NCBI RefSeq assembly: GCF_036588685.1
Contig: NC_086376.1
Location: forward strand, 61,256,001 to 61,320,000
DNA: 64,000 bases
Direction: 5' to 3'
DNA from: Mytilus trossulus
Lineage: Eukaryota
Below, one piece after another: positions 2,149 through 51,155 of the stretch. Positions within the stretch are counted from its first letter, which is position 1. Each line of letters starts with the position of its first letter. Under the pieces are notes generated by a model. The model had not been told where the DNA came from and did not search any database. It saw nothing but the letters and a program-made list of their open reading frames with translations. The position numbers and the translations under genes are program-made.

Positions 2149-2615
2149 CTAATATGTTCCTTTTTTACCTGCAAAATAAACTAAAAAAGATTATTTCATA
2201 GAAATGTCATAGAATTTTTGTATAAATATTAATTAACATACGGTGGTGATTTTATATCCTATTGTTTAAAGCTGAAGCATAAAATACTTGATGTGCATAA
2301 ATATCTTCGTTTTACTTTTGTGTTAGTTCATTTCTGTTATAAATTGATGTCCTATATATACTATAGTCATTGACCACACAAGTCATTATGATAAATTATA
2401 AAATAGACATTTTACCAAAAAATAAAGGTTTTAATAGAAGATGTATATATAAAAAAGGTTAACCTCAATGAGATAAAGTAATGTTATCAATTAATTATTA
2501 ACAGTTGTAAAGTAGCATTATTGTCCAATCCGATGTTGTGTGAGATATTGTCATCTCTTAGTAATATGTGGTATTCCTATCTATCGTTTCATTGAGTATG
2601 GGGAAAGTCCCCTTA
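2149..2615 (-). pseudogene. Relic fifth paralog of the Gly-rich gene family: promoter, exon 1 and terminal exon with no main coding exon
   Basis: Terminal exon ctaatatgttccttttttac|ctg at 2149-2168 is identical to copies 1, 3 and 4. 2310-2615 aligns with the family exon 1 donor, TATA (cctatatatac), tgaccaca, aaatagacattt and ggttaacc.caatga blocks. Only about 150 bp separates the two exons. Confidence 0.7.
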
Positions 2616-3884
2616 TGTCTTAAACAATGTTTCATGTGGTGTTTTGCTATCGAGTTAAAATTCAATGGAGTTGTTTTACGATTTTTTTCTAATCTCCATG
2701 GTTCTGTTATTTGTACGTTTTCTTTCATATAATATTTTTTATAGTTATACGTATATGGACTTATGTTTCATAATTGCTGCATGATGACTTTTAAAAGAAT
2801 TTCAATGTGTGTAAAGTATCCTTTTTTAGATGGCACTGCATGGTTAAAAATTTATGGAGAGTAGGGTCGAGTATATCGTTAAGGTCATATATGACAGCAC
2901 TATCCACAATCAGGAATCTTATGTACAGTAGTTGTCGTTTGTTTATGTAATTTATACATGTTTCTCGTTTCTCGTTTTTTATGTAGATTAGACGGTTGGT
3001 TTTCCCGTTTGAAGGGTTTTACACGTGTAATTTTGGGGTCGTTTATACATTGTAGCTTTTTGTTCGGTGTGAGCCAATGCTCCGTGTTGAATGCCGTACA
3101 TTGACCTATAATGGTTTACTTTTATAAATTGTTATTTGGATGGAGAGTTGTCTCATTGGCACTCACACCACATCTTTCTATATCTATGCAGTTGGCATCA
3201 AAATGACACATAGATGACCCTATTATTAATACCTGTTTATTTATGATATGTTGCGTTCATAAATCGATTAAGAATGTACAGCTTTGGTTTAACTGAAATA
3301 TTGATACAATATTCATGACGTCCTTAAACTCATTTAGTGATTGCATTTCATTAAACTTAAATACAGTGACCTTAAAAACTGGAGACCACCGAAAGTAGAA
3401 TGTCTGCAACATAAATTGATTATTTTTTTTTATATACAATTACAGATAGAAGGCTTCAAACTAGATTATATAACTTAAGTACCGGGTTCAGCTTTCCTAC
3501 TGTCGACTTCCCACTTCATAACAGTAGCATGTCCTCTGTCATCTTAATTGATATTTTTCATATTATACTGACTTCTTTAACTTTAAATCTCAAAACTGTC
3601 AACCGGGTTAAGCGAAAGATCCATTGATTGACGCCGCATAAAGTGTAAAATCACCATGAATTGGTTGACGATACAATGCGTCTCTATTCTAATTGTATCC
3701 TATTGTATATATTTTGACATTTTGACTGTAAATTTGCACGGAGTATGACGGTTATTTACATATATATTTATATTGGAAATGGAAATGAGGAACATGTCAA
3801 ATAGACATCAACCCAACCAAAGAATAAAAAAACGGACGAAGGACACTGATTATATATATATAATTGCGGTTTTTATCCAACGCA

Positions 3885-4625
3885 ATCATGGGTTTGAACG
3901 TTGTCAAACTCATAAATCGCAAATAAAATGACAACGTCATGGATAAAAATGAAAAAGACAAACAGACAAACAGACAAACAAACAAACAGACAAACAATAT
4001 TACACATGACACAACATAGAAAACTAAAGAATAAGCAACACGAAGCCACCAAAAACGGGGTGCTCTCAGGTGTTCCAGAAGGGTAAGCAGATCCTGCTCC
4101 AGATGTTGCACCCGTCGGGTTGCTTATGTAATAACACATCCGGTAAATAGTCTAATTCGGTAGGTCATATACATGAAAGGGAAGGGGATTGTAGTTACGA
4201 CGTACTGAACATATCCGATATTATTTGTGAAACAGTTATTCCATAATGGTCAACCAACTCATGATGGCGTCCTTAAAATTTACGAAGGGATTATTGCAAC
4301 CTCATCATTTGGAACTCTTGGTTTAATAGCTTCCTTGTGAGCAGCAACCCTCTATCAAAAAAATCATGATAGGAAATGCAAGCACGGGAATATCGTATCA
4401 ATTGGGAGATATATACCCGTATGCAGGTGCTGCTGGAATGTTGGTACTTACAAATGGAAAGTTCTCAATTGGAAAGCTGAGATCATCTCTGTTGTCGTGA
4501 AGTATTGTTTTCAACCGACCCTCGTTATCAATTTCTAAATGTAAGTCAAGATATGAGACCGACTCAACTGTATTTGTTGTATCCGTTATCTCTAGTTCGA
4601 CGGGATAAAGGCGTTCCAAATAGCC
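3885..4625 (-). mobile_element. 5'-truncated Penelope-like retroelement copy (RT C-terminus and 3' UTR)
   Basis: Reverse complement of about 37100-37800. ORF 4398..4811 contains RLYPVELEITDTT..SYLDLHLEIDNEGRLKT; the copy is frameshifted. Confidence 0.9.
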
Positions 4626-6200
4626 ACCAACTAAGTATTTGATAACTATTTGATAACTATTTGCAGTCTTTGCGCCGTGTTTGGAAATTTTAAAATTGCA
4701 CCAGCGTCTCTGATGTTTGTTTAAACTGTTTTTATTTGTATAAATTTCAAGATTGCAATAACTAATTTTTATATAAAATTTATATTTTAGCAGCATTCCA
4801 GAGAGGGACATAAAAAGCTTCCCTTTAAGTGAATAATTTGTTGTTACTGCTTTACAAAAATACTGTTTACTTATAACTTTATATTTATTTAAGGTATGAC
4901 TTAGGAAAACGTTTTCTATTATAGCAGAATATTTGAAATAAGAAAAAAAGGCTTACCAAACCACTTAGTATGGCTTGCTCGGTCATCAAATATTCATGGT
5001 AGAGTCCTACTCTAGGCCAATATTCTCATATTATGTGTTTTCGAGATTCAAGATATTAACCATCAAAGGAGGTTAACCTATGAAATGTTCACTTCCTTTT
5101 CTACCTAGGTACAATATTTAGTAACGATGTAACCCCTTACTTCCAAAATATTCGTAAGATAGATGATATGTATTTTTATGACCCGCAATTTTTTTTTCTG
5201 GAATAAAAAGTAATATCCATTCTCTACAACTGTCAAATTCAAGGGAATATTTTTGTTTCGACCCTACATCGAATGCAACCGGATGTGACATGCAATTTGG
5301 TGTTACACCTTTTCCATTCGTTACATTTGTTGATATAGTCTTACGTTTAATTTTGTCAGTATTTATTGAGTTCCCATGTTTTATATTGAAGTTTGATTTT
5401 TTATTAATACTTTTTTCATATATATACTATCTGGAAGACTTTAAAGGTCGTTGTGCAAGTAAATATATCTAGCATTCAACATGATAATAATGAATCTTGG
5501 CTCTTCTGAAAGAGAATTATCACGGATTAACATGTTGAAAAGGCTGAAGAATCAGAGCTACACATAAAACGTTTAATTGTTGATTCTATTAATATACATA
5601 TAAATAACGTCTTATTGTCATTGAATTGTCATTATTTATGACAGTTATCTTCGTAATTTCTTTTACTTATATGAAATATTTCTGTTTTTATAAAAGAGTA
5701 GTCTATATACCAATTCATCTCGCCATTGTGTTTTTGGGTTATTTTCGTTTTTGTATTAAAATGTCTATATGCTTTTTCGTGCTTCTTTGTTTCATTTTTG
5801 TTTGTTTTTATAGTGGTTAAGATTATAACTCAAAACTGATAGCTGTACCTCTATCTTTGACATTTTTACCTTTAATGTATTATTTTTGTTTGATTTGTTC
5901 ACTCATCGTTGAAAGGATAAGGATATTTCACTCTTATACATACAAATGAGAGGTTTAGGTGGCTATAAAACAAGGTTAAACCCTATATATTCTACATAAG
6001 AAATGCCTGTACCTAGTCAGGCATATGCCATTTGTTATCCATTGGTTTAATGTGTTTGAACTTCAGAAAACAGGAGTTGCATGAAACAATTAAGTACAAT
6101 GAATCCTTTTTAATATACATTTAATATTTATAAACCATTATAAACAAAATAAACAAATTTGTAGAAAATCTCCATCAATTCTTCATTGTCTCCTCCGATT

Positions 6201-7726
6201 CTAATATGTTCCTTTTTTACCTGAAAGGATAAACGATGTTGTTATAATAATTTGGGTGCATTGTATAATAGAAGAAAGAGTTGTGAATAAAGTTCATATT
6301 CTCCAAGTAACTAGTTTGATGTACATTCTACTAAAATTGATCAATCCGCCAGGTTTTTTTTATATTTATTTATGTACCCTCCGGTTGTTTATAAATATTT
6401 ATTCCTCCGTGTATCTCCTTCTTTGTTTTGTTATTATGCTGTGTCAAGTTTTTATAATTTTTGATTCAGAGAATAAGTATTTTAATTAATATAAATTACT
6501 TTAAAAATAGAATACAATGCACTAGGAATAAGAATATAAATCTTTACAACAAAAAGGATATGTCCTTTCATTTTGTATGAAACTCCCTCTCAAATCACAA
6601 TTTGGCAATAATAGTTATTATATAATATTTACAAAATTGTCCATTTATTTTATTTAGTGGTGTTAGATTACTTACCTCTAAATTTACCAAAACTGCCACT
6701 GTGAACGTTTCTTCTATTTATGAGTCCACCATTGACGTTAATACCAAAACCATTCAAACCACCAATACCATGTGATCCTAAACCATTCATACCACTATAT
6801 GATCCAAAACCATTCAAACCACCATATGATCCTAAACCATTCATACCACTATATGATCCAAAACCATTCAAACCACCATATGATCCAAAACCATTCAAAC
6901 CACCATATGATCCTAAACCATTCATACCACTATATGATCCAAAACCATTCAAACCACCATATGATCCAAAACCATTCAAACCACCATATGATCCTAAACC
7001 ATTCATACCACTATATGATCCAAAACCATTCAAACCACCATATGATCCAAAACCATTCAAACCACCATATGATCCAAAACCATTCAAACCACCATATGAT
7101 CCAAAACCATTCAAACCACCAATACCATATGATCCAAAACCATTCAAACCACCATATGATCCAAAACCATTCAAACCACCAATACCATATGATCCAAAAC
7201 CATTCAAACCACCATATGATCCAAAACCATTCAAACTACCAATACCTCCAATACCATATGATCCGTGGTTATTAACACCGTATGCCCCATTAAAACCATA
7301 TGATCCATACACATTTCCTCCAAGTCCTTGTCCGTATCCATAACCCATGAAAGGTCCAATAACTTTGCCGTAAACACCGTTATAACCATAACCACCTAAT
7401 CCATTTAAACCCCTTCCGTTCATGAACCCGTATCCAGGATATCCACTTTGTATATTATATCCATTGTATCCAGAATAACCACCAATGTTTAACGGTGAAC
7501 CGTTACCATACGCGTTGTTGGAAAATCCTCCAGATCCATAACCTAATCTGCCATAAGACGGATATCCGAAGCCACCATTTCCTTGAAATCGAATACTTCC
7601 AATATTACCTGGTCCGAATGGGTTTCCATATGTTTTCAGGTTATATTTGGGACTATATCCTTTCTCTCCGGCCTCGGATGCCACGAGTCCAAAAAGGGCT
7701 AAACCGATCAATAATATTGGTGTCAT
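6201..7726 (-). CDS. Secreted Gly/Tyr/Asn-rich repetitive structural protein, copy 1 (about 356 aa); coding exons 7726-6676 and 6220-6201
   Basis: Signal peptide MTPILLIGLALFGLVASEA and GGLNGFGSY repeats. Donor AGAG|gtaagt at 6676/6675 and acceptor tttcag|GTAAAAAAGGAACATATTAG give ...GKFRGKKGTY*. The acceptor tttcag lies 11 nt before the ATG (exon starts 7737). Confidence 0.9.
6760..7262 (-). repeat. Coding tandem repeat, 27-bp unit (GGLNGFGSY / SGMNGLGSY) with an 81-bp higher-order period
   Basis: ccatatgatccaaaaccattcaaacca repeats directly; the variant ctatatgat..cctaaaccattcatacca recurs roughly every third unit. Confidence 0.95.
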
Positions 7727-8009
7727 GTTTAGTGGTTCTGAAACGATATTCCATTATAATTAACTAATAATAATTTATGTGAAAATTCAAAACATTGACT
7801 TATCAGAACGACAGAACATATAAAGAAAAAAAATAATTGCAAAGATTTAAGACGTAAGTAAAATGAAATGTAAGTTGAATCTATATTAAAAAAGGTCAAA
7901 CTTATCCTGGCGTTTTAAGTTCCTGAAATTTATTTAAAAAGAAAGTAATGCTAAATATATCAAATATGAAAAACATATTTTTTCAAACAAACACAAAACA
8001 TACATTTAA

Positions 8010-11000
8010 GGGGGTACCCAACACTATACCCCAAAAAATTCCTGTCGTTTAATTTTTCTTAATTTTTTTTCATTGATAAACTAGGCCAACCTTAACATCT
8101 TGTAAAAATTTTAAAAGATTTAAACCATAGGTTTAAAAGATTTGGCAATTCAAATATGGCATCTTTTACATACTAGTATCAGCCAAAATTGGAAGTTTCT
8201 GAAATATGGGTATAGGGTTGAATTTGTTAAAAAAAAAAAATTTAATCCGAAATTGACAATAGCATAGCTAATAATGATAGCTGAGGAGAATATTAGTTCA
8301 CTGATACCCCCTTCTTGTAAGTTTTTTACTCCGGTTAAAAAAAATTGCCAAAACTTTACTAGGGGGTATCAGAATCAGCCCTGAAAAGTGAATGCTGTGC
8401 TTCTAGTATTTGAAAAAGAATTTTTTTTGGAAAAAAAATTGTGTCGTTTATTTTTTTCATATAACTAAGCATTTGGAGTGCTATACTAGTTGGTTGTTCT
8501 TGCAAATTTTTTTTAAAATTTAACCGTTAGAATTTTTGGAATTTGAGTTTAAATTAGGCCCAACCCTCAAATTGGTTCATTAAATAAGAGCAAAATCTAC
8601 TCAAAAAGTACATAATGGCCATAATTTTGTTTGTCTTTTGAACTAGGCCTTAGCTATTTGGCATGTGGATGTATCATCACAGGGTTAAGTGTCTTGCATC
8701 ATGATGACCTTTGTGTGACCTTCAAATGTGACCTCAATGTCAACTTTATGGGTGTTTTTCCGTGAAAAACTCAACCATGTAGGCCATCACTTCTTTGCCT
8801 TTTGACCTAGGCCTTACATCTTTGGCATGTGGATGTATCACCATGAGGTGGTGTGCCTTCTTAAAATTTTGACCTTTATATGACCTTGAACTTTGACCTC
8901 AAGGACGATAATTGTGTTTTTTTTTGGTAAGAAACACTTGTCCAGGCCATGACTTTCATGTATTTATGAATTCATATTTATTTTAAAAAATCATATAACA
9001 AAAGCTTTAATCAACCATACAACAATATAGACACATTTTATGACATTTCAAGCCATTCAATGCACATGGAATACAAAATGGACATGTAGTCACATACAAT
9101 TGTTTGAAAAGGGAATCGTTTCTATTGAAGCACAGTGTACGTTCTTAAATACCCAACAGACAGGAGTGAAAACTTTCTAGGAATCAAACAATAGGAGGAG
9201 TTATGCCAAATAACTATATACCAATAAAGGGAGGGACGGACAGGGGTACCCCCCCCCCAAACCTACAATCAGTTGCAGGGGGGACAAAAGGATGTAATTG
9301 ATTTTTGTTGTGAGATAATAGCTGTTAAAATTAAAAGCATGACACACCAAAAATACACATGATACATATGCAAAAGCTTTAAAGTTGGCAGATGCTTTAC
9401 ATGATCAAGATTTCAATTTATTGGTCTTTTAGCCAGATTCAAAAATATACGTTCAAAATATAACGTCAAAACCATTGGTCCAAAGAATTACGGCTTCAGT
9501 ATGAGAGATGAAATAGAGCTGACTGTGCAAAATCCTTATACTGTTAAATCAAGTTTGTTAAACATAGACCTTTTTTTAGTATTTCTGCTAATGTTTATAA
9601 ATATGACAATTAAATACAACAGATTTCTAGTTAAAAGCACGGCAGTTACAAGTTTCACATTATTTTGGGCCCCTTATTATGATTGAGAATGATTACTCTA
9701 TTCGGTAATAATCTTAAATTTAGACTTGAAAATATACATTTTCACATATATATATATAATTGTCACTTGCAACAACACCACACTTTCTTTTTTATATTTA
9801 TTTCAAAATTGCATTTGATTAAAAAAATCGGAAAGATACACAAACATGATAATGGAACAACAAAAGAAAATAACAAATTTTGCTATCCCTTCGGAATTGA
9901 AATTTGATAAAGCGAAAATAACATGTTCTATTTATATCATTCATGTGTAGTTTCAGTTTCAACTATGATTCTAAATATAGACTTTACTTTCCCTAAAATT
10001 GCGGACGGAATAGAAGACACCCATTAATTTTCTACACATGTCAAGATATTAAAGGTTGGAAAAAGCTACTAGAAAGATATAGTTATTTTTTTATTCAGAT
10101 GAATATAGAAAGCAAAAATATGTGTAGTGTTTTTTGGACTGAATGAGATGTTTTTTTCTTCTTTTCCCTTGTTCCGTGACATGTTAATGATACACTGGTG
10201 GTTGAGCTAGTTTCCCTCTGGTTATCTTCGAACTTTTTACATGAATATAAATCATTCAATAATATATTCAATTGCACTTTAAATAATATGACAGCTATTA
10301 TAAAATCATGAATTATTCGTAATCTTTTTAACATTACTACATGTATTACTAAGGCCATAGAAAAATACTATAGTTTCGTTTAACAATAGTCCAAACTACA
10401 GAAGGCGTCCCAGAAAAAAAATTAAGATAGCCTTGCCAGACGTCTTAATTATTTGGACTAGTTTAACAAAAAAAAAAGTTTGAGAAGTCAATTCAGTTTT
10501 GATTTAATCAATTTGATATAAAGAAGATCTATGAACATAAGCATTGTGTAATTGTCCAGGGATTCTTATTTATTTGGTCAAAATTTTATTGTCGGAGGGA
10601 GCTACCATTTGAGAGAAGGGTAGGAGGGGTCCTTGTCCCGAAATCCCGGCTTAAAAACACGAAATCCCGAGATCCGAATTTAGATAAATTTAAATCCTGA
10701 CATCCCGCGAAAGGGTCAATCCTTAAATCTTGACAATAGAAACAGTCGATCCCGGAGTCCCGATAAAGGTCCTATCCACACTCATTTGAGGAGGGGGCTA
10801 GATGAAACTTGAAAAAGGCAAGACAGGCTTTGGAACAAACAAAGGCAGGATCAGTAATTTAGCATAACAGGATGACAATTTATGAAAACAATTTCAGTAA
10901 ACTAATGAAAATCACAGGTCTGTAAAGAATGAAAAATAAAAAAATGCAGGCCGATAATATAATGATGAGTTCATGCAACTATAAAAAAAAATGCAGGACA

Positions 11001-11427
11001 AAGTTTTTTAAATCCTAGCCCTCCCCTCTTAAAATCAAATGGTAGCATCCTTAGACTTTTTACACTTTATTACATTTTATTAAAGTCCTACATGTAGGCA
11101 TTGCCAAGTAAAAAACGAAAACAGTTATGGTCCCTTCTCTTTCTGTTTCCCTCCTTTTCAAACGTCCTTGTTTTCTTTTGGTTAATTTATTTCACTTTGA
11201 AATTTCCCTATTAGGTCTCATTGAAGGTTCATTTATTGAAAATAATTAACTTTAAATTCTTTTTAAGGATTAAATGAATAACAAAGGGTGTACAGCTGGT
11301 CTTAGCAATAATGTAAACATTCTGATCATGATCTTTTAAAAGCTTGCATATTGCACATAATTTTAAAACGCAACAATGAATCAGACTATGAGTAAGAGTT
11401 ATCTTTTCTGAGGTGTTCTGTACCCCC
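8010..11427. mobile_element. Non-autonomous TIR DNA transposon with TTAA target duplication (Kolobok-like) in intron 1 of copy 1
   Basis: TTAA|GGGGGTACccAACAC ... GTGTTctGTACCCCC|TTAA. The paralogous intron in copy 2 (29771-29790) shows the empty site. Confidence 0.85.
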
Positions 11428-11449
11428 TTAAAGTATAGCAACTGCTTAC

Positions 11450-11730
11450 CTTTGTGTCGTTCTGTGATGGCGGGTTCCTTGTGGTACTCTGTGATCGTTG
11501 TCCTTTAAATACCATACTTACTGACCAAACATTTGTAATAATCTGTTATAGAATAGACATTTGACAATGATAAAAGTGTGTCTATTTAAACATGATCGAA
11601 AATATAGCCATCAATTATGTGTTTCTATTGTTTTACTTGCTGTAATCATCGTGGTTTGTGGAGTTTCACCTATCAATAAAATTTAATTTATACTACATGT
11701 GTAATTTAGTTTTAAGGGAAATTCTTCATT
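11450..11730 (-). promoter_or_regulatory. Non-coding exon 1 (donor at 11450) and promoter of copy 1
   Basis: caaag|gtaagc donor; TATTTAAA at 11504-11511; the block is conserved upstream of all paralogs. Confidence 0.75.
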
Positions 11731-20460: not shown

Positions 20461-20479
20461 ATTTGCTTCTCATATATAT

Positions 20480-28578: not shown

Positions 28579-29502
28579 TTAATATGTTCCTTTTTTACCT
28601 GAAATGATAAAACAATGTTCACATAATAAGTTGATTACATTGAATTATTGAAGGAAGAGTTGTGAATTAAGCAAATTCTCTTTTGATTCAGAGAATAGGT
28701 ATTTTAATCAGGATTAATCATTTTCAAAATAGAATACAATGCACAAGGAAAAAGAGAATAAATCTTCACATCAAAAAACAATATGCCATTTTGTAATGAC
28801 ACTCGCTTTCAAATAACAATTTTTCAATTGTTGTTATATTATATTTATAAAATTTCGATTTTATTCTATTTAGCGATCTTATATTACTTAACTCAAAATT
28901 TGCCAAAACTGCCAAACCCACTGTGACTGTTTCTTCCATTTATGAGTCCACCATTGACGCTAATACCAAAACCATTCAAACCACCTATACCATATGATCT
29001 AAGACCAATCAAACCACCATATGATCCAAAACCATTCAAACTAACAATACCGCCAATACCATAAGATCCCAGATTATTAACACCGTATGCCCCATTAATG
29101 CCATATGTTCCATGCATATTTCTTCCAAGTCCTTTGCCGTATCCATAACCCATGAAAGGTCTGATTCCTTTACTGTATACTGTATTCTCCTTCCGTTCAT
29201 GAACCCGTATCCAGGATATCCACTTTGTACACTATATCCATTGTATCCAGAATAACCACCAATGTTTAACGGTGAACCGTAACCATACGCGTTGTTGGCA
29301 AATCCTCCATATCCATAACCAAATCTACCATAAGACGGATATCCGAAGCCACCATTTCCTTGAAATCCAATACTTCCAATATTACCTGGTCCGAATGGGT
29401 TTCCATATGTTTTCAGGTTATATTTGGGACTATATCCTTTGTCTCCAGCCTCGGATGCCACGAGTCCGAAAGGGCTAAACCGATCAATAATATCGGTGTC
29501 AT
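28579..29502 (-). pseudogene. Gly-rich secreted protein copy 2, pseudogene
   Basis: Close to copy 1 but has a 1-nt deletion in the signal peptide (about 29468), a net 28-nt loss at 29161-29188, AGA>TGA at 28893-28895 and donor GT>TT at 28891. Terminal exon is 28579-28598. Confidence 0.88.
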
Positions 29503-29798
29503 GTTTAGTGGTTCTGTAACGATATTCATTTATAATTAACTAATAATAATTTATGTGAAAATTCAAAACATTGACTAATCAGAACGACAGAAAATATAAA
29601 GAAAAAAAATAATTGAAAAGATTTAAGACGTAAGTGAAATGAAATGTAAGTTGACTATATATTTAAAAAGGCCAAACTTATCCTGGCGTTTTAAGTTCAT
29701 GAAATTTATTTAAAAAGAAAGTCATGCTAAATACACCTGAAAAACATAATTTTTAAAACAAACACAAAACATACATTTTAAGTATAGCAACTGCTTAC

Positions 29799-30105
29799 CT
29801 TTGTGTCCTTCAATGATGGTGTGTTTCTTGTGATACTTTGTGATCGTTGTCCTGTATATACCATAAACACTGACCAAACATGTCGTAATAATCTGTTATA
29901 GAATAGACATTTGACAATGATTAACATGTGTAAAAGTGGGTCTTTTTAAACAGGGTTAACCACAATAATAGAAAATGTTGTCATCAGTTATGTGTTGCTT
30001 TGTTTTACCCGCTGTAATTATCATCGTGGTTTGTGGACTTTCACCTATCAATGATATTAAATTTAAACTAAATGTGTTATTTAGTTTAAAGGAAAATCCT
30101 CATTT
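29799..30105 (-). promoter_or_regulatory. Non-coding exon 1 (donor at 29799) and promoter of copy 2
   Basis: Homologous to 11450-11730; TATATA at 29855-29860. Confidence 0.7.
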
Positions 30106-34500: not shown

Positions 34501-37500
34501 CATACATTATTTCGGGACCATTTATAACTGACTATGCAGTATGGGCTTTACTCATTATTGAAAGCCGTACGGTGGCCTATAGTTAATTTCTAACTGACCT
34601 GTTAAGTTAGAACTGTGTCATGTTGGTCTCTTGTGGAGAGTTGTCTCATTGGCAATCATACCACATCTTCATTTTTAAATATAAATGTGCTGTTTTCGAT
34701 TTTAAATGGTTAACATTTATCTTTTAATTTTAAAGCAGATAAAAAAAAATGAAACTCAGCAACAAATAAAAGCATAAGCTAGAGTACAGTGATTAACATT
34801 TATCTTTGTCGGTCATCTGTGTCAATTTACGTGCACACTGACTACATTGTTGTTGTATTTAAATCTTTCGACCACTGAAATGAGACGTAACAAGTTGTTT
34901 GTTTGTAATACGCCAGAATGTTATCAATTAAGAATTGAATGCTTCTTTTTGTAAATTTATTGGGGTGTAAAACCGTTGACCGAAGTACATTTTGTATGAA
35001 GCGCGGAAGCGCTTCATTCTAAAAATGTACGCACGGTCAACGCTTTTACAACCCTATAAAGTTACAAAAAGAAGCAATCAATACTTATAATTTCATTTTT
35101 TTAGCTAGGATCATTAAAACACGGTTTTTATAGAGTTTTATTTAATTCACCTGTGCACTTTTTTGTAGGACCTCGTGTCATTATGAATGATAAGTTTTAT
35201 TGTCTGATGCAATTGCTTACGGAATAACATGTGATGTGCATTTAGCCAATCAGAATAACGTATTATAATGAAACATACATCTAATGTAATAATTGAACTA
35301 TCAAACGCGAAAGTTGACTGCATTTCAGTGAATTTCCCATCACAAGAAACCATTTGATGAATATTCATATTCGCCGAGAATAGGTTTGTTGTGATATCTA
35401 ATTCATAGACATCCAAAAACTTACACTATAAACTGCTCAGAGTCTGAATTGACCAGTTTTTGTGCTCGACCAGTAAAATCGAGCACACATTTTACTCGAC
35501 TAGTCTCGACATTGTCTCGACTGTACTTAACTGTACTTAAGTGTACTCGACTAGGTCTCGACTTTACTTACTTAGTCTGATTCAGTACTTGATGATCTTT
35601 GTGTAGTCTGAAATAGTCTTGGCCAAGGCTCGACCTGTTTCGACCTGTCTTGACTTGTCTCGACCTGTCTCGACTAGTCTCGACTCAGTATCAACCAGTC
35701 TCGACCTGCCTCGACAAGTCTTGACCTTCAAATTTAGTTTAGACTGGTGTAAATCCGCCAATCTTTCTAAATTAAATATTGATCTTACAATAATCAAGCT
35801 TATTAGGTAGTTTTTTTATTGCTGTGAAATGAAAGAATTTAATTTTACAAAAGGTGAAAATTATTATATAAATTCAGATGGGCATCTTTAATTTTTTAAG
35901 CTTACTGAATCCCAGGTCATTTTATTTTTTGTTGAAATGCTGTCAAATTCAAGAATTAAATTAATCTAGGTCAAAAAAGATAGAATTTGCAATTTGGACA
36001 AAATAGAGATAGTACACTTTATTTTTTTCAATAACTTTTTCAAATCAACTTGGATTTTCATCAAACTATGTAGCTATCTTAGATATATATTAAGTTTACT
36101 GAATCCCAGGTCATTTTATTTTTTGTTGTATTGCTGTCAAATTCAAGAATAAAATTAATCTAAGTCAAAAAAGCTAGAATTTGCAGTTCGGACAAAATAG
36201 AGATAGTACACTTTAATTTTTTTAATAACTTTTTCAAATCAACTTGGATGTTCATCAAACTATGCAGCTATCTTAGATAGATATTAAGCTTACTGAATCC
36301 CATATCAATTAGTTATTTGATGTAGTGTTGTAAAATTTAAGAATTTAAGTTATCTTGTTAAAAAAAAAGCTAGGATTTGCAATGTGTACAAAATAGAGAT
36401 AGTACACTTTAATTAATTTTTAATAACTTTTTAAAATCAACTTGGATTTTCATCAAACTATGTAGCTATCTTAAAACCCCTTTCTAAATTATTAACATCC
36501 ATTTTATCAGCAATCAAAAACGAGCTTCAAAGTTATTGTGAAACTGCCTTTTCTAGAGGTGGCGTGAATCATATGTGGATACTTAAAAATTCCAAAGATC
36601 TTTTAGAGTACATACAATCTAACTCTCTTTCATCTTGTAACAGTATTAAAACATTTGACTTTTCTAATCTTTACACAAGTATTCCACATTCCAAACTAAA
36701 AGACAAATTAAAAGAGTTGGTATTACTTTGCTTCATAAAAAAGAATGACCAACGTAGATACAAGTATCTCGTCTTAGGGAGGGATAAGTCCAACTTTGTA
36801 AAGAATCACTCTGATTCAAACAAAGAATTCTCTGAAACCGATATTATCAAGATGCTTGATTTCTTGATTGACAACATATTTGTTACGTTCGGAGGACGTG
36901 TTTTTCAACAGACTGTCGGCATCCCAATGGGAACAAACTGTGCCCCTCTATTTGCTGACTTGTTTCTTTATTATTATGAGGCTGACTTCATGCAGGAACT
37001 TCTTAGGAAGAAAGATAAGAAGTTAGCAATATCCTTTAACTCTACTTTCCGCTATATAGATGACGTTCTTTCACTAAACAATTTAAAATTTGGTGACTAT
37101 GTGGATCGCATCTATCCCATAGAATTGGAGATAACGGATACTACAGATACAGTTAAGTCGGCTTCATATCTTGACTTACATCTAGAAATTGACAATGAGG
37201 GTCGGTTGAAGACAAAACTTTACGACAAAAGAGATGATTTAAGCTTTCCAATTGTGAACTTTCCATTTCTAAGTAGCAACATTCCAGCAGCACCTGCATA
37301 CGGAGTATATATCTCCCAATTTATACGATATTCCCGTGCTTGCATTTCCTATCATGATTTTCTTGATAGAGGGTTACTGCTCACAAGGAAGCTTTTAAAC
37401 CAAGTTTCCAAATGGTGAAGTTGAAATCATCCCTTCGTAAATTTTACGGACGCCATCACGAGTTGGTTGACCGTTATGGAATAACCGTTTCACAAATGAT

Positions 37501-39563: not shown

Positions 39564-41719
39564 CTAATATGTTCCTTTTTTACCTGCAATGACAAAAATA
39601 ATGTTGAAATAATAGCTGATTGCATTGCATTATTAAAGAAAGATTTCAGTTCATATTCTCAAAAGATTTTGTTAAATGTACATTCCGCTAAAATTTCTCA
39701 AACTTTCAGTTTTATGTCTTCTACGGTCGTTCATATCTGTTCTTATTCTTCCGTACATCTCCTTCTTTTCCTTCAGTTTTTCAGGTTTGATTTAAATAAT
39801 TGGTATTAAATTAATCTAAATAATTTTCAAATCAAACAAAAAGAATGCACAAGGTTTATGGAAAACGACTTGTCGCATACAATTTCAAAGCTTATTTCAA
39901 ATTTTTCAAAACCTTTCAAATCAATAAAATTGAGAAAGGAAATGGTAAATATGTCAAAGCGACAACCACCCGACCATAGAGCAAACAACAGTCGAAGGCA
40001 ACCAATGGGTCATCAATGTAGCGAGAATTCCCGCACCCGTAGGTGTCCTTCAGCTGGCCCCTAAAATATGCATAATAGTACAGTGATAATGGACGTCATA
40101 CTAAACTCCGAATTATACACAAGAAACTCAAATTTAAAATCATACAAGACTAACAAAGGCCAGAGGCTCCTGACTTGGGACAGGCGCAAAATTGCGGCGG
40201 GGTTAAACATGTTTATGATATCTCAATCCTCCCCCTATACCTCTAGCCAATGTAGAAAAGTAAAAGAATAACAATACGCACATTAAAATTCAGTTCAAGA
40301 GAAGTCCGAGTCCGATGTCAAAAGATGTAACAAAAGAAAATAAATAAAATGACAATAATACATAAATAACAACCGACTACTAGCAGTTAACTGACATGCC
40401 AGCTCCAGACCTTAATTAAACTGATTGAAAGAGTATGCCTTCATCATATGAATATCAGGTACAATCCCTCCCGTTAGGGGTTTAGTATCATACTATCATA
40501 AAATATATGAAAAGAACATAACCCGTGTCATGCCAACAACTGTGTTTTTAGAAATAAATGTGTTTAGTTTCATGTTCATTTGTTTATACCTTGCTATGCT
40601 TAAGTCTTAGTTTAGAAATATCAATAAAGTCTCCATAGAGTGAAGCATAAGCAATCAATGTAATATTGTAACAAAGTATTTTACCATATACCACCAAAAG
40701 TTATAAATTATCCAATTCATTCATCATGCGGCATGATTTGTTTAACGATTTCCTTTCACACATATTCGTTTGTCGGAACAACGTGACGAACGAATGTCAT
40801 TTTGTATGAAACCCTCTTAAGTTACAAGCTGGCAACTGTATTTGTATTATAATTAGAAAATTTCACATTTACATAACAACTTTTTCTTCTTTTTAGTGAT
40901 GTAGGATTACTTACCTCCAAATTTACCAAAACTGCTCAATCCACTTAGACCTCGTCTTCCATTTATTAGTCCACCATTCACACCAATACCATTACCATTC
41001 AAACCACCAATACCATTACCATTCAAACCACCTACACCGTATGATCCAGAACCATTTAAACCACCAATACCATGAGATTTATAACCATTCAAACCTCCAA
41101 AACCGGATGATCCAAAACCATTTAAACTACCAATACCACCAATACCATATGATCCAAAGTTATTCAAACCACCATATGATCCGAAACCATTCAAACCCTC
41201 ATATGATCCAAAACCATTCAAACCACCAATACCATATGTTCCGTAATTGTTTGCACCACCGTATGCCCCATTAATACCATATGCTCCATAACCATTCAAA
41301 TTGTTATATCCTTCAATTCCTCGACCGAATCCATTACCATTAAAAAGTCCGATATTTTTACCGTTAAAACCGTAATTTTCATTACCACTGAATCCGTTCA
41401 ATCCTCTGCCATGTAGATATCTGTATCCAGGATATCCACTTTGAATACTATATCCATTGTATCCAGCAATACCACCAATGTTTAATGGTGAACCGTAACC
41501 ATAGGCGTTGTTGGAATATCCCCCGTATCCGTATCCTGATCTACCATAAGTTGGATATCCAAATCCACTATATCCTTGGTATCCAAAACTAGCAATATTA
41601 CCTGGTCCGAATGGATTTCCATATGTTTTCAGGTTATGTGTGGGACTGTATCCTTTTTCACCGGCCTCCGATGCAACGAGTCCGAAAAGCACAAAAGAAA
41701 TCAATACTATTGGTGTCAT
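39564..41719 (-). CDS. Secreted Gly/Tyr/Asn-rich protein, copy 3 (about 274 aa); coding exons 41719-40915 and 39583-39564
   Basis: The true start is MTPIVLISFVLFGLVASEA (acceptor at 41731). Same donor and acceptor as copy 1, giving ...GKFGGKKGTY*. AATAAA lies about 75 nt past the stop. Confidence 0.9.
39924..40571 (+). mobile_element. Dispersed repeat inserted in the last intron of copy 3
   Basis: Absent from the matching intron of copy 4 (tcaaatcaatgttcatttg at about 49390). Starts aataaaattgagaaaggaaatgg like other copies. Confidence 0.85.
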
Positions 41720-41940
41720 GTTTGTTGGTTCTGAAACGATTTTCAATAATTCGTCAAAATAAAAAAAATAATAATAAAACCTTTAAAACATAAACAAAAA
41801 CGGATCACCGAAAATGCTTAAGTAGATTAATGAAAGATAAAAGTTGTAAATAAAATATTGAGTTATGACGAATTATGACGATTAACATGATCTTTTGTGA
41901 GAGAAAGACGAATATCTTTTAAAGCAAATCAAGTACTTAC

Positions 41941-42260
41941 CTCTGTAATGATCTATGCTGGTGTGTTCCTTGTGATACGTATTGTTTACTGCGTCTTATA
42001 TAATATACTCACTGACCACACATTATGTTATAATCAGTTATAAAATAAACATTTAACAATGATAAACCTGTAAAGTGGGTTTAATTAACAAACAAAACCC
42101 CCAAAAAAACGGTTTACCACAATGATAGAAAATATTGTCATCAATTATTTGTTGCTATTATTTTACCCTTTGTTATCTTGGTTTAGGGACTTTCACCTAT
42201 TAGTAATATTTGAAATTCATATAATACAAGTGTAATTCAGTATTAGGAAAATTTCCCATT
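41941..42260 (-). promoter_or_regulatory. Non-coding exon 1 (donor at 41941) and promoter of copy 3
   Basis: agag|gtaagt donor, TATATAA at 41996-42002, conserved upstream blocks. Confidence 0.75.
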
Positions 42261-44448: not shown

Positions 44449-44492
44449 ACACCAGACGCGCGTTTCGTCTACAGAAGACTCATCAGTGACGC
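44449..44492 (-). ncRNA. Minimal type I hammerhead ribozyme
   Basis: Same core; the 3' stem I strand is tggtgt (G-U wobble). Confidence 0.92.
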
Positions 44493-46692: not shown

Positions 46693-49035
46693 ATAACTAG
46701 ATACCTGAATGTTGGATGAATAAATACCGAAACACGTCGTATAGCAATGCAAATTCACAAGCCAAAACACAGTACTATTCGGAAAAAGGTCACGTTCGGT
46801 AATTAGCAGAAGAAGACATAGATTTCAAACCACAATCTAAGCAGACGTGGTCAAGGGTCGTTAATTAATTTCAGCAATCATCATAAAGATCAACCAATTC
46901 ATGATGTTGCCCTAAAAGCAAACAAACAAACAATATAACATAACACACAACATAAACACCCAATGACTAAGCAACACGGACCCCCCCCCCCCTAAAACAT
47001 TGGGATGATCTAAGACAAACAGACAAACAATGCTACATAAAATATTAACCCGGCAAGTCTAATTTACGGAGTCTCATGAAAACCATTTTTGATACCTGTG
47101 GTAGTCGTGTTTTTAAACCAGTGTTCATTCTTATGGAAACCAAATGTGCCTTTGATTTTCTTCTAGTATTCTTATTCTTTCGTTAAAACAAGGTAAAATT
47201 CAGAGATGTGCTTTTCAAGATGAATTTCAAGAACATAGATTTATCCTTAAATTTGAGTTCATGTTGTATACTATTGTTTTCTCTTTGAATAATTCATAAT
47301 GAAAACAAGAAGATATGGTATAATTGTCAATGAGACAACCCCACATGGCATTGACGTAAGCAGATCCAGGTCACCCTACGACCATCGAAATGATAAAAAA
47401 CAATATCATCTACCTATATAAATCTAGAATATATCGCGCCATTCCAACTAATCTCAAAATAAGAGGATGTAATAGATAGTGTAGGTCTAATAATATCGCA
47501 AATAACATAACCTTGTCGAGGCACCTGGTCTTCATCAATTTTCGATTTCATGAGTCTCTTCTCATTTTGTAATTTGTTTTCAACTATTCTAGTAGATTTG
47601 AACTATTGACATTACAACTTGGTTTATTATATAGACATTAAAACATGGTGTATCATAACGAAACCTCTCCGTCGTAGATCTAAGTGCAATACCATGGTTT
47701 TAGTGTTTTGTTTTCATCTTTTTGTTGATTTTCAAGTTGACCAATCTTTTCTAGTGACGTGTAAAATATTATGTACTGTTTTGATTTTTTTTTGTTTTTT
47801 TTATAATAGAGTTCAGAAATTATTGCAGGGTTTTTATAAATGTGAATGGTGCGACTAGGTGCATTCCTACATCTGATACATTTTTCTAAGTAGACATTTT
47901 TCAAAAATCCCAATAATTTACTGTCACTTTTGTTAAATCTACAAATATTGAAATATTTTTTTATTTGCAGTTGTTGTCTCAGAATGAACGAAGTTTTTAT
48001 TTGCAAATCATACGTTGCCATATACCGTTCTCTTTTCTTCGACATCACCGAATAATGAAACAAAAATAAAAAGTATATCTGGAATGAGCAACACAGAAGT
48101 GTTTCGCAAAAGCAGAAGGCTAGTTCAATATGATTTCAACTTATATCTAACCATGGTTGTCAGACTTATATTGTTTCTTAAAATGTCCTGAACCAAGTCA
48201 GTTAACTATTGTTTCGTTGTTTTATTCTTACACTTGATGTTGTACTTCGTGAAATTGGTTTGTTTTCTCTCAATCTGTTTATGACTTTTAATCGGAGGTA
48301 TACTACTGTTGCTTTTATTTATATATCAATCAGGAACCTTCCATCTGATTTAGTGTTCAACGTCACAATCAGTTTGCAAAATGCATGACTTTTTACAGTT
48401 AAGTTTTGAGGAGCCGTATTTATATTTACATGCAATAAAAATAAAACGACTGCCAAAATTATGATGTGATATTATGTTAGTCATAAGGACGCTACATGAC
48501 CATGCAGTAATACTGCTTTATCCAACTTGTCTATAAATGTGAACGTCAAGATAAGATACAGACTTAATTGTATCTCGTCTGCAGTTTAATGGGAAAGATG
48601 CTTTCAGCTTAGTCACCAAAAATTGTATTATTCAGCAAGAGAAAATCATTTATATAGCAAAATGAAAAGTTAATGGATACTGCCAACATCTGTTCTTCTT
48701 CATCAGACGTTTCTGTATAAAGTCAGGCTCCTGTGAAATAAGGAAAACCTCGCCAATAATTGTTATTTCATTTCCATGTGATAAGCAAGGTTTATTTTCT
48801 CGAAAATGTTTTGTTGGCTTTTGTTTCTCATTTTACCTTTTTGGTCGCAATAATTCGTTCACATATTGTTTTCAATTGAATTGCTTCTCTATATTTCCAT
48901 TAAATGGTACTATAGAAAACAAAACGTGCATGAAAAATCAAGAAGAAAGAGATTAAAATTTATTTTAATATACATAAACCATTATAAAAAAAACTGTAAA
49001 ACATTGACATCAATTCATCATGGACTTCTTGAATC

Positions 49036-50630
49036 CTAATATGTTCCTTTTTTACCTGCAATGATGAAAACAATGTTCAAATAATAAGGTGATTGCATTG
49101 CATTATTAAAGGAAGATTTCAGTTCATATTCTCAAAAGATTTTGTTAAATGAACATTCCGCTAAAATTGCTCCAAAAAAACTTTCGGTTTTATGTCTCCT
49201 ACGGTTGTTCGTATCTTTTCTTATTCTTCCGTACATCTCCTACTTTTCCTTCAGTTTTTTATGTTTTATTTAGATAATTGGTATCAAAATAACTTTCAAA
49301 TCAAACGAAAAAAATGCACAAGGTTAATGGAAAACGACTTGCCCCATACAATTTCAAAACTTATTTAAAAAAAATCAAAACCTTTCAAATCAATGTTCAT
49401 TTGTTTATTCCTTGCTATGCTTTAGACTTAGTGTATAATTAAAGATAAATTCTTCATAGAGTAAAGTATAAGCAATCAATTTAATATAGTAACAAAATAT
49501 TTTACCATATACCACCCCATCTTAAATAATTATCCAATACATTCATCATGGAGCATGATTTGTTTTCCGATTTCCTTTTACTCATATTCGTTTGTCGGAA
49601 CATTAATCTAAATCAATTAACGTGACGAACGAATGTCATTTTGAATGAAACACTTTCAAGTAACAAGTTGGCAATTATATTTGTATTAATATTATGAAAT
49701 TTCACATTTAAATAACAACTTTTTCCTCTAGTAGGATTACTTACCTCCAAATTTACCAAAACTGCTCAATCCACTTAGACCTCGTCTTCCATTTATTAGT
49801 CCACCATTGACACCAATGCCATTACCATTCAAACCACCAATACCGTATGATCCAAAACCATTTAAACCACCAATACTATAAGATCTATAACCATTCAAAC
49901 CACCAAAACCAGATGATCCAAAACCATTTAAACTACCAATACCACCAATACCATATGATGCAAAGTTATTCAAACCACCATATGATCCGATACCATTCAA
50001 ACCACCATATGATCCAAAACCATTTAAACCACCATATGATCCATAACTATTTAAACCACCAATACCATATGTTCCGTAATTTTTAGCACCACTGTATGCC
50101 CCATTTATACCATATGCTCCATAACCATTTAAACCACCAATACCATATGTTCCGTAATTGTTAGCACCACCGTATGCCCCATTAATACCATATGCTCCAT
50201 AACCATTTAAATTGTTATATCCTCCAATTCCTCGACCGAATCCATTACCATTGAAAGGTCCGATATGTTTACCATAAACACCGTAATTTCCGTTACCACT
50301 GAATCCGTTTAATCCTCTGCCATGTAAATATCCGTATCCAGGGTATCCACTTTGTACACTATATCCATTGTATTCATTATAACCGCCAATGTTTAATGGT
50401 GAACCGTAACCATATGCATTGTTGGAATATCCCCCGTATCCGTATCCTGATCTACCATAAGATGGATATCCAAATCCACCATGTCCTTGGTATCCCAAAC
50501 TACCAATATTACCTGGTCCGAATGGATTTCCATATGTTTTCAGGTTATGTTTGGGACTGTATCCTTTTTCACCAGCCTCCGATGCAACGAGTCCAAAAAG
50601 GGCAAAGGAAAGCAATACTATTGGTGTCAT
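49036..50630 (-). CDS. Secreted Gly/Tyr/Asn-rich protein, copy 4 (about 301 aa); coding exons 50630-49745 and 49055-49036
   Basis: Start MTPIVLLSFALFGLVASEA; same splice sites; ends ...GKFGGKKGTY*; closest to copy 3. Confidence 0.9.
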
Positions 50631-50826
50631 GTTTGTTGGTTCTGAAACGAATCCGTTAAATAAAAGAATAATTATAGTACCTTCAAAAATAAGCAAATAC
50701 GTATAATCGAAAATGAAATAAAAAAGTTGCAAATAAGATATTGAGATGTATATACAAAATATGACGTTAAACATGATCTTTTGTGAGAGAAAGACAATTA
50801 TCTTTTAAAGCAAATCAAGTGCTTAC

Positions 50827-51155
50827 CTCTGTAATGATCTATGCTGGTGTGTTCCTTGTGATACGTATTGTTTGCTACGTCTTTTATAATATACTCACTG
50901 ACCACAAATTTTGTTATAATCAGGTATAAAAAAGACATTTAACAATGATAAACCTTGTATTATAAAATTGGTTTTTATTCAAAAAAAGAAAGAAAAAAAG
51001 GTTAACCACAATGATAGAAAATGTTGTCATCAATTATTTGTTGCAATTGTTTTCTCCGTTATTCTCATCGTCGTGGTTTGGGTTATTTACCTATGAGTAA
51101 TATTTGATGTTCATATAATGCAAGTGTAATTCAGTATTACGAAAATTTCCCATTT
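50827..51155 (-). promoter_or_regulatory. Non-coding exon 1 (donor at 50827) and promoter of copy 4
   Basis: agag|gtaagc donor, TATAAAA at about 50882-50888, homologous to the copy 3 promoter. Confidence 0.75.

What the first reader, a model, noticed from the sequence alone, without database searches (positions are those of the whole stretch)
2149..51155. Tandem family of secreted Gly/Tyr/Asn-rich matrix proteins that I cannot assign to a named gene
Three intact genes, a pseudogene and a relic share a signal peptide, a conserved N-terminal region (EAGEKGYSP.(Y/H)NLKTYGNPFGPGNI), a variable-length GGLNGFGSY repeat domain and a basic tail ending in Tyr. The layout recalls pearl-oyster shematrins (Gly-rich, basic..Y C-terminus). 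The composition recalls mussel byssal thread matrix proteins (Gly/Tyr/Asn). The repeat unit is not one I recognise, so this is a candidate undescribed shell, periostracum or byssus biomaterial family.
Basis: partly seen in the sequence, partly recalled or inferred. Interest (0 to 1): 0.8.

Follow-up and report, generated by a model that had tools for sequence, protein, structure and literature searches.

The report
Mussel secreted glycine-tyrosine-asparagine protein gene family
This stretch of a mussel (Mytilus) chromosome holds three working copies, one broken copy and one hollow remnant of a gene for a secreted, floppy protein rich in glycine, tyrosine and asparagine. It is probably a building block of the byssus or the shell's outer coat, but the tissue that makes it is still unknown.

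Summary
On the minus strand lie three intact three-exon genes (g1, g2, g3), one pseudogene and one hollow relic. Each gene has a TATA promoter and a short non-coding exon. The main exon encodes a signal peptide, a conserved N-terminal region and GGLNG(F/Y)GSY repeats. A 20-nt terminal exon adds ...GKKGTY. A public RNA contig removes intron 2 exactly as predicted.

The family is larger than the window. The genome has 16 copies on one chromosome, in two mirror-image arms about 250 kb apart, and is probably M. trossulus.

Relatives were found only in Mytilus species and in a few unnamed sequences. All carry "uncharacterized" or automatic names. There is no Pfam hit, and AlphaFold2 predicts disorder. 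The mature proteins are 21-33 kDa, basic, cysteine-free and rich in Asn-Gly.

The family resembles shematrins, TMP-1 and periostracin but fails defining features of each.

The most likely role is a cross-linkable matrix protein of a tanned extracellular material. This is inferred; no tissue or proteome evidence could be obtained.

The scan has noted other glycine-rich clusters in this genome, but not this one. Interest is moderate.

The parts
49745..50641 (-). g3 main exon (exon 2). ATG at 50630; encodes the signal peptide, the conserved N-terminal region and the Gly/Tyr/Asn repeats; donor GAG|GTAAGT after 49745.
   Evidence: covered by RNA-type contigs in runs X1, X2, X3 and X9
49036..49055 (-). 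g3 terminal coding exon (G)KKGTY-stop. The 3'UTR runs on to at least 48987.
   Evidence: an X1 contig joins it to exon 2, skipping 689 nt with GT..AG ends on the minus strand
50827..50870 (-). g3 exon 1: short and non-coding, downstream of a TATAAAAG box. The donor lies after 50827; the start is estimated.
   Evidence: Conserved in 4 copies in alignment A2. No read evidence, so inferred.
40915..41730 (-). g2 main exon (ATG at 41719)
39564..39583 (-). g2 terminal coding exon
41941..41985 (-). g2 exon 1 (non-coding; start estimated) behind a TATA box
   Evidence: inferred
6676..7737 (-). g1 main exon (ATG at 7726). Contains the 27-nt x 17.1 tandem array at 6767-7241.
6201..6220 (-). g1 terminal coding exon
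11450..11495 (-). Probable g1 exon 1 and promoter, 3.7 kb upstream of the main exon (start estimated)
   Evidence: similarity only, so inferred
28890..29513 (-). Pseudogene main exon: 1-bp, 28-bp and 2-bp deletions, and the donor changed from GT to TT
28579..28598 (-). Pseudogene terminal exon (stop is TAA)
29799..29845 (-). Pseudogene exon-1-like element behind a TATA-like box
2149..2500 (-). Hollow relic: a promoter-like stretch with a TATA box (about 2340-2500) and the terminal exon (2149-2168), with no main exon between them

Best explanation
These are genes of a Mytilus-restricted family, of which this genome holds 16 copies.

Shown:
- The products have a signal peptide and so are probably secreted.
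- The mature proteins are predicted to be disordered.
- They are about 35% Gly, 10-13% Tyr and 11-13% Asn, basic, and free of Cys and Trp.
- Lys and Tyr are concentrated at both ends: N-terminal KGYSPK(Y/H)NLKTY and C-terminal GKKGTY.

Inferred:
- After secretion the aromatic/glycine repeats GGLNG(F/Y)GSY let the chains condense into a matrix.
- Tyrosinase-type oxidation of Tyr to DOPA/quinone, with Lys as partner, cross-links the chains, mostly through their ends. The product would be part of a tanned extracellular material: the byssal thread matrix or cuticle, or the periostracum or organic shell framework.
- The 17-26 Asn-Gly dipeptides of the A-type proteins would deamidate spontaneously, so the basic protein would grow more acidic as the material ages. 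This has been described for byssal TMPs.

Repeat number changes quickly by unequal exchange, and the array grows by tandem and inverted duplication.
For: Gene reality:
- Intact ORFs, consensus splice sites and a TATA promoter are conserved in 4 copies.
- A spliced contig exists in run X1, and contigs over the main exon in 4 of 4 runs laid, from two organism labels.
- dN/dS of the N-terminal region is 0.14-0.59 in all 36 A-type pairs.

Secretion and disorder:
- The leader is hydrophobic with VAS|EAG or VAA|EAG.
- AlphaFold2 mean pLDDT is 34.7, and the only element is a helix at residues 3-21.
- No Pfam family matches at E<=1.

Composition, for 5 of the 14 intact products: G 33.5-37.3%, Y 10.1-13.2%, N 11.2-13.0%, pI 9.3-9.7, 21-33 kDa, 0 Cys, 0 Trp.

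Charge placement: in mature g3, Lys sits at positions 5, 10, 14, 104, 166, 276 and 280 of 280, before the KK of the tail.

Asn-Gly: in A-type proteins 46-67% of Asn precede Gly, against 30-36% in shuffles. In g1 the count is 26, against 14.1 +/- 2.9 and a maximum of 24 in 2000 shuffles.

Repeat dynamics:
- g1 has a 27-nt unit in 17.1 copies at 89% matches.
- Transcript contigs differ from the genome by 105-132 nt in the repeats.

Analogues in print:
- TMPs are Asn-rich, deamidating matrix proteins of the thread core; TMP-1 has pI 9.5 (passages of PMC12817120 and PMC9999432).
- Periostracin is a basic 20-kDa Gly/Tyr/DOPA protein (passage of PMC3821031).
- Shematrins end in basic residues plus Tyr (passage of PMC3896809).
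Against: - There is no tissue, proteome or localisation evidence. Run names were coded and the library type is only guessed as RNA.
- Ten runs with the same species label hold next to none of the sampled words. Expression is therefore restricted in some way that I cannot name.
- No homology to any characterised byssal or shell protein was found.
[quoted passage not shown] Non-material roles in the gill or in mucus are therefore open.
- Asn-Gly enrichment is weak or absent in B-type copies: 33-53% of Asn, within the range of shuffles.
- DOPA formation, cross-linking, condensation and deamidation are all untested.
Confidence: 0.55

Rival explanations
1. Specifically a periostracum or shell-framework protein of the mantle edge (periostracin-like or shematrin-like), not a byssal protein.
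For: - It is basic, Gly/Tyr-rich and cysteine-free. B-type mature products are about 21 kDa, against periostracin's 20 kDa, basic character and 10% Tyr (PMC3821031 passage).
- The C-terminal basic-plus-Tyr tail recalls the shematrin/KRMP signatures listed in PMC3896809.
- Lineage-specific expansions of repetitive low-complexity proteins are described for the Mytilus mantle (PMC8194122 passage).
Against: - Gly is 34-37%, not 55%.
- The tail is GKKGTY, not RKKKY, RRKKY, RRRKY, IRRKK or PRKKY.
- No Pinctada hit appeared.
- The tissue is unknown.
Confidence: 0.3
2. Specifically a byssal thread matrix or cuticle protein of the foot glands (works like TMP).
For: - The Gly/Tyr/Asn composition, pI of about 9.5 and many Asn-Gly sites match what the reviews say of TMPs.
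- The family is restricted to Mytilus plus a few unnamed sequences.
Against: - Mass is 21-33 kDa, against 56.5 kDa for TMP-1.
- The printed TMP-1 repeat GYGYGNYGYGY (PMC6474901) has 0 matches in the six-frame translations of the window and all 35 loci.
- No protein named TMP was among the hits.
- I could not obtain the TMP-1 sequence or read its paper.
Confidence: 0.25
3. A secreted protein that builds no material: a gill or mucus component, or a precursor of glycine/tyrosine-rich defence peptides.
For: - A gill-specific glycine-rich secreted protein is reported in Mytilisepta.
- The protein-atlas neighbours are arthropod Gly-rich and cuticle-type clusters, but only at 0.76-0.83, below the tool's level of trust.
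- Other glycine-rich peptide clusters were noted elsewhere in this genome (unchecked notes).
Against: - At 200-335 residues the mature proteins are far longer than typical defence peptides.
- There are no conserved dibasic processing sites inside the repeats. RR occurs only near the C-terminus of A-type copies.
- The Mytilisepta primers printed were compared by eye only and show no evident match.
Confidence: 0.15
4. Part of the copy number (the plus arm at 61.57-61.64 Mb) is an assembly artefact, a second haplotype placed in inverted orientation, rather than a real inverted duplication.
For: - The arms are 94-97% identical over 1.1 to 5.6 kb of intergenic DNA.
- Mirror gene pairs have dS of 0.06-0.08. 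By my recollection this is within the range of mussel haplotype divergence.
Against: - The arms differ in gene number: 2 against 4 g3-type genes.
- They are separated by about 249 kb of other sequence carrying other ORFs.
- Nothing here tests the assembly directly.
Confidence: 0.25

Closest known systems
Thread matrix protein TMP-1 of the Mytilus byssus
   Same: Both are secreted, Gly/Tyr/Asn-rich and basic (pI about 9.5), with Asn prone to deamidation. TMP-1 is a non-collagenous matrix protein.
   Different: - Mass is 21-33 kDa against 56.5 kDa.
- The repeat is GGLNG(F/Y)GSY against the printed GYGYGNYGYGY.
- No sequence hit was found.
- The TMP-1 sequence itself was not available to me.
Shematrins and KRMPs of pearl oysters (Pinctada)
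   Same: Both have a signal peptide, a Gly/Tyr-rich repetitive body, and a short basic C-terminus ending in Tyr.
   Different: - The tail is GKKGTY, not the R/K-run signatures.
- The repeats are not of the GnY type, and Asn is abundant.
- No Pinctada hit appeared.
- The conserved N-terminal region is specific to this family.
Periostracin of Mytilus edulis (protein known only by composition)
   Same: Both are basic with about 10% Tyr, and periostracin's 20 kDa compares with about 21 kDa for B-type products. Its sequence had not been determined as of 2013, according to PMC3821031.
   Different: Gly is 34-37% here against 55%. DOPA and solubility could not be tested.
Other lineage-restricted glycine-rich secreted protein clusters noted by this scan in the same genome
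   Same: These are tandem clusters of secreted low-complexity Gly-rich proteins, some with a Lys-plus-Tyr C-terminal end or a tail encoded by micro-exons (unchecked notes).
   Different: They have different repeats, composition and conserved regions.

Membership tests
Shematrin | C-terminal signature RKKKY, RRKKY, RRRKY, IRRKK or PRKKY (as listed in PMC3896809) | tested here: not met
   The tail is GKKGTY in all five terminal exons. It is basic and ends in Tyr, but it is not one of the listed signatures.
Shematrin | Gly/Tyr-rich GnY (n = 2, 3) repeats followed by a hydrophobic residue | tested here: not met
   The dominant unit is GGLNG(F/Y)GSY, encoded by a 27-nt repeat. Asn makes up 11-13%.
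Shematrin | Detectable sequence homology to Pinctada shematrins | tested here: not met
   The exhaustive phmmer search of the 115-aa N-terminal region gave 7 hits at E<=0.001. Two of them (P0001, P0003) were traced to Mytilus; the other five have no named source (three unnamed ENA or Logan sequences and two unrelated repeat proteins). None carries a Pinctada or shematrin name. The repeat-domain search gave 10 hits, all Mytilus. Shematrin sequences themselves were not compared directly.
Shematrin | Expression in the mantle edge, or presence in the prismatic layer | not testable with these tools
Thread matrix protein (TMP-1) | Gly/Tyr/Asn-rich, basic (pI 9.5) | tested here: met
   G 34-37%, Y 10-13%, N 11-13%, pI 9.3-9.7, against the table in PMC9999432.
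Thread matrix protein (TMP-1) | Mass of about 56.5 kDa | tested here: not met
   Mature exon-2 products are 21-33 kDa.
Thread matrix protein (TMP-1) | Consensus repeat GYGYGNYGYGY (as printed in PMC6474901) | tested here: not met
   0 matches to this motif or to two shorter cores in the six-frame translations of the window and 35 loci.
Thread matrix protein (TMP-1) | Made by the foot core gland and present in the thread core | not testable with these tools
   No tissue-resolved data were reachable.
Periostracin | Basic protein of about 20 kDa | tested here: met
   Met for B-type copies only: L011 has a mature mass of 21.3 kDa and pI 9.72. A-type copies are 25-33 kDa.
Periostracin | 55% Gly, 10% Tyr, 2.2% DOPA | tested here: not met
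   Tyr at 10-13% fits, but Gly at 34-37% does not. DOPA cannot be tested.
Mytilus GKKGTY family (this family, defined here) | Signal peptide, then E(A/L)GxKGYSPKxN(L/I)KTYGN, then a Gly/Tyr/Asn repeat body, then a ...GK(F/V)xGK tail. A further KGTY comes from a micro-exon in the Mytilus copies. | tested here: met
   Invariant columns in the 15-sequence alignment A3. The same features appear in 14 of the 16 genomic copies; the other two are broken.

The most novel reading that the evidence does not exclude
The family, especially its 21-kDa B-type members just outside the window, encodes the never-sequenced periostracin-type precursor of the tanned mussel periostracum, or an equally major unnamed byssal matrix component. 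In this reading its Asn-Gly-laden repeats act as a built-in chemical clock. Spontaneous deamidation switches the protein from basic to acidic after secretion, which changes how the material holds water, metal ions or mineral as it ages.
Probability: 0.12. Interest if true: 0.7.

Novelty: new member of a known kind. Interest (0 to 1): 0.42.

Why it matters
Mussel byssus and periostracum are models for tough, wet-adhesive, self-assembling materials, and the list of their matrix proteins is incomplete. According to a 2013 paper, periostracin had still not been sequenced.

This family has features a materials chemist would look for: Lys/Tyr-bearing ends, a disordered aromatic/glycine repeat body of variable length, and many deamidation-prone Asn-Gly sites. 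The gene models given here (a hidden 20-nt terminal exon, three genes that seem absent from public protein sets) would let proteomic searches find the products.

If the proteins turn out not to be in any of these materials, the family is one more lineage-specific low-complexity secreted family, of which this genome has many.

Tried and rejected
Pfam gave nothing for g1, g2 or g3 at E<=1.

The protein atlas gave only weak arthropod Gly-rich neighbours at 0.76-0.83, below the tool's level of trust.

The AlphaFold2 model was too poor (mean pLDDT 34.7) to justify a fold search, so none was run.

Full-text searches found nothing for one 8-residue motif or for six further motifs. Searches on thread matrix protein, shematrin, byssus proteome, TMP-1, keratin-associated protein 19, periostracin, periostracum proteomics and core gland found no paper that names this family. 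I read passages only, not whole papers, of PMC3896809, PMC5549309, PMC7971044, PMC6474901, PMC12817120, PMC9999432, PMC3821031, PMC8194122 and PMC6641155.

Supplementary tables are closed. Shell, byssus and mantle proteome or transcript lists in those papers could contain these sequences, so 'not in print' holds for the searchable main texts only.

The Sagert & Waite 2009 TMP paper is not held, so TMP-1 could be compared only through a printed consensus motif and table values.

The search with the distant relative P0002 added no named relatives.

I considered alternative splicing as the cause of the 105-132-nt skips within exon 2 and rejected it. Their ends are not GT..AG, and they lie in a 35-residue block that g3 has in duplicate compared with its paralogs. 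They are repeat-length differences between alleles or paralogs. The X1 contig matches no single paralog of this genome. At its 21 variant positions it shares 13 letters with L002, 11 with L003, 9 with L004, 10 with L005 and 8 with L006.

I looked for telling neighbours in the roughly half-sampled 249-kb spacer. I saw only a mucin-like Ser/Thr/Pro/Glu-rich ORF, an SRCR-like ORF, a B-box-like ORF and paralogs of the window's 17.9-18.8 kb ORF (by eye). None was put through Pfam and none is a known byssal or shell gene.

In one search, B-type dN/dS pairs involving L014 or L015 are unreliable. A one-residue indel shifts the ungapped comparison, and I do not use those rows.


Full report
WHAT IS IN THE WINDOW

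The ORF listing shows three long minus-strand ORFs at 6668-7726, 40907-41746 and 49737-50774. They share a hydrophobic leader, the sequence EAGEKGYSP(K/T)(Y/H)NLKTYGNPFGPGNI, and a long Gly/Tyr/Asn-rich repetitive body. A shorter related ORF lies at 29036-29461. A tblastn of the three products against the window finds exactly four main-exon copies.

Each ORF stops just inside a consensus donor...AAATTT(G/A)GAG|GTAAGTAAT. Downstream of each copy, 455-1331 nt away (456 in g1, 689 in g3, 1331 in g2), a conserved acceptor is followed by the invariant 20 nt GTAAAAAAGGAACATATTAG. In the pseudogene the stop is TAA.

Upstream, a TATA box and a short non-coding exon ending ...ACA(G/A)AG|GTAAG are conserved in g3, g2 and the pseudogene. 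A copy 3.7 kb upstream of g1 is probably g1's own exon 1. A fifth terminal exon at 2149-2168 lies only about 200 nt from a promoter-like stretch with nothing of the main exon between them. This is the hollow relic.

Compared with g1, the pseudogene has a 1-bp deletion in the leader, a 28-bp deletion, a 2-bp deletion near the end, and a donor changed from GT to TT.

g1's repeat body is a 27-nt unit in 17.1 copies at 89% matches, encoding GGLNGFGSY.

TRANSCRIPTION AND SPLICING

The shares of sampled words were 0.05-0.29. All rows are labelled 'RNA?' by guess. Ten further runs with the same species label held next to none of the words.

I laid four runs on window 48850-51200. All four gave contigs over the main exon, and none gave contigs over intron 2 (49056-49744), the region upstream of 50643, or the region downstream of 48987.

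One 862-nt contig of X1 joins 48987-49051 to 49741-50012 to 50118-50643. The first joint skips 689 nt with CT..AC ends on the plus strand, which is GT..AG on the minus strand. Its cut can shift by 4, to 49055|49745, exactly the predicted exon borders. Such a contig can only come from spliced RNA, so a g3-type gene is transcribed and the 20-nt terminal exon is real.

The contig is 95-99% like g3 and matches no single paralog of this genome. It shares 13 of its 21 variant letters with the mirror copy L002 and fewer with the others. It therefore comes from an allele or ortholog of the g3 subtype in another animal.

The 105-132-nt skips inside the main exon lack splice-site ends. They fall on a 35-residue block that g3 has twice and are repeat-length variants.

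Exon 1 has no read support.

The terminal-exon splice is also used in public gene models that end GKFGGKKGTY: P0001, P0003, P0009 and P0015-P0018. Other models run into the intron instead: P0011-P0014.

SIZE AND LAYOUT OF THE FAMILY

Searching the window's own genome with the 115-aa N-terminal region gave 16 matches, all on one contig.

| Location on C4 | Strand | Matches |
|---|---|---|
| 61.236-61.306 Mb (the window is 61,256,001-61,320,000) | minus | 6 |
| 61.571-61.640 Mb | plus | 9 |
| 64.29 Mb | minus | 1 |

Fourteen have open main exons and two are broken, L010 (the window's pseudogene) and L016.

There are two subtypes. A-type starts MTPIVL... and includes g1, g2 and g3. B-type starts MSLKAF... 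and is about 57-61% identical to g3 in the N-terminal region.

The two arms are mirror images in gene order: B, B, g1-type, g1-type, g3-type, g3-type | spacer | g3-type x4, g1-type x2, B x3. In the tree, the closest relative of g3, g2 and L015 lies on the other arm in each case: L002, L004 and L014. Support values are 97/90, 93/84 and 93/66.

Intergenic DNA confirms the mirror. C4:61,563,315-61,570,000 matches window 58,630 down to 51,746 in inverted orientation at 94.7-97.1%. C4:61,585,531-61,590,000 matches window 48,565 down to 43,736 at 94.5-96.6%.

The structure is therefore known from about half of the sequence. It is either a real inverted duplication with a spacer of about 249 kb or a misplaced haplotype, and I cannot tell which.

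The contig length of 96,324,366 equals the 'longest contig' recorded for the M. trossulus protein P0018. P0018's first 100 mature residues are identical to L013's. The genome is therefore most probably Mytilus trossulus.

RELATIVES AND NAMES

The word-indexed search with g3's N-terminal region found 2 proteins among 109 candidates. One is an unnamed M. coruscus product (83% identity). The other is an unnamed ENA sequence (50%).

The exhaustive phmmer search of 1.84 billion representatives found 7 proteins at E<=0.001. Five look like relatives: P0001 and P0003-P0006. Two are unrelated repeat proteins, P0007 and P0008.

The repeat-domain search found 10 proteins, all from Mytilus: coruscus, edulis, galloprovincialis, californianus and trossulus. 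Their names are 'unnamed', 'uncharacterized', 'hypothetical' or the automatic 'keratin-associated protein 19-2-like'. The search with the distant relative P0002 added nothing named.

No protein at 90% identity or more to the N-terminal regions of g1, g2 or g3 is in the 5.8-billion collection. The three window genes therefore seem absent from public protein sets, although B-type neighbours are annotated.

THE PROTEINS

No Pfam family matches.

AlphaFold2 with the 15-sequence family alignment gives a mean pLDDT of 34.7. Its single helix, residues 3-21, is the signal peptide.

For the five products measured, the mature main-exon part has these properties:

| Property | Value |
|---|---|
| Length | 209-335 residues |
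| Mass | 21-33 kDa |
| pI | 9.3-9.7 |
| Gly | 33.5-37.3% |
| Tyr | 10.1-13.2% |
| Asn | 11.2-13.0% |
| Cys, Trp | none |
| Acidic residues | 2-5 |

Lys is concentrated at the two ends.

In A-type copies 46-67% of Asn are followed by Gly, that is 11-26 Asn-Gly per protein, against 30-36% in composition-matched shuffles. Only g1 exceeds all 2000 shuffles. B-type copies show 33-53%, and most are within the shuffle range.

The N-terminal region is under purifying selection, with dN/dS of 0.14-0.59 in all 36 A-type pairs.

HOW IT PROBABLY WORKS

Shown: these are secreted-type, disordered, basic Gly/Tyr/Asn proteins with Lys/Tyr ends and fast-changing repeat numbers.

Inferred from established chemistry of quinone-tanned mollusc materials, and from what the reviews say of TMPs and periostracin: the chains condense through their aromatic/glycine repeats. 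Tyr is oxidised to DOPA/quinone and cross-links, with the Lys/Tyr ends acting as handles.

Also inferred: the many Asn-Gly sites deamidate spontaneously. That this dipeptide is the most deamidation-prone is my recalled general knowledge. Over time this would lower the protein's positive charge.

Which material is involved is open. I put about 0.55 on a tanned extracellular material in general. The periostracum/shell and byssus readings are sub-cases of that, at about 0.30 and 0.25. I put about 0.15 on a role that builds no material.

COMPARISON WITH KNOWN FAMILIES

Shematrins share the layout. But the tail signature, the repeat type and detectable homology were all tested and not met.

TMP-1 shares composition and pI.

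Periostracin shares basicity, Tyr content and, for B-type copies, size. But its 55% Gly is not met.

I therefore file the family under none of them. It is a new, Mytilus-restricted family within the known kind of secreted repetitive low-complexity biomaterial proteins. Expansions of such proteins are already described for the Mytilus mantle (passage of PMC8194122).

The scan's own notes list several other glycine-rich secreted clusters in this genome (unchecked). This tempers the surprise.

VERDICT

- Novelty: new member of a known kind.
- Interest: 0.42.

Noticed in passing
G000:C4:61,236,000-61,640,000 (the window is 61,256,001-61,320,000): The gene family forms two mirror-image arms about 249 kb apart. 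Intergenic DNA is 94-97% identical in inverted orientation, and the closest paralog of several genes lies on the opposite arm. This is either a large inverted duplication or a misplaced haplotype.
   Followed up: partly
It has paralogs in the spacer between the two arms.
   Followed up: partly
window 36564-37418 (+) and 4398-4811 (-): Reverse-transcriptase fragments of a retroelement: RVT_1 at E = 2.6e-05, below Pfam's cut-off. The tails of the two ORFs are alike, and dispersed repeats of 70-94% identity surround the genes.
   Followed up: no
Rfam at gathering thresholds gave no match anywhere in the window. A copy at 81% identity lies at C4:61,647,752-61,648,182.
   Followed up: partly
L025 1919-4435 (-) and 6130-6519 (-): In the spacer lie an 839-aa open frame of Ser/Thr/Pro/Glu-rich mucin-like repeats and, by eye, an SRCR-like exon. 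Neither was checked against Pfam.
   Followed up: no
window 7738-11449: g1's intron 1 would be 3.7 kb long, against about 190-210 nt in g2 and g3 (about 290 nt in the pseudogene). This suggests an insertion, or that the exon-1-like element at 11450-11495 no longer serves g1.
   Followed up: no
P0011-P0014 (public Mytilus gene models): Several public models of family members read through the exon-2 donor into the intron (tails such as ...GKLSQII or ...GKLFQTIQWEDK) instead of using the 20-nt terminal exon. These are probably annotation errors rather than isoforms.
   Followed up: no
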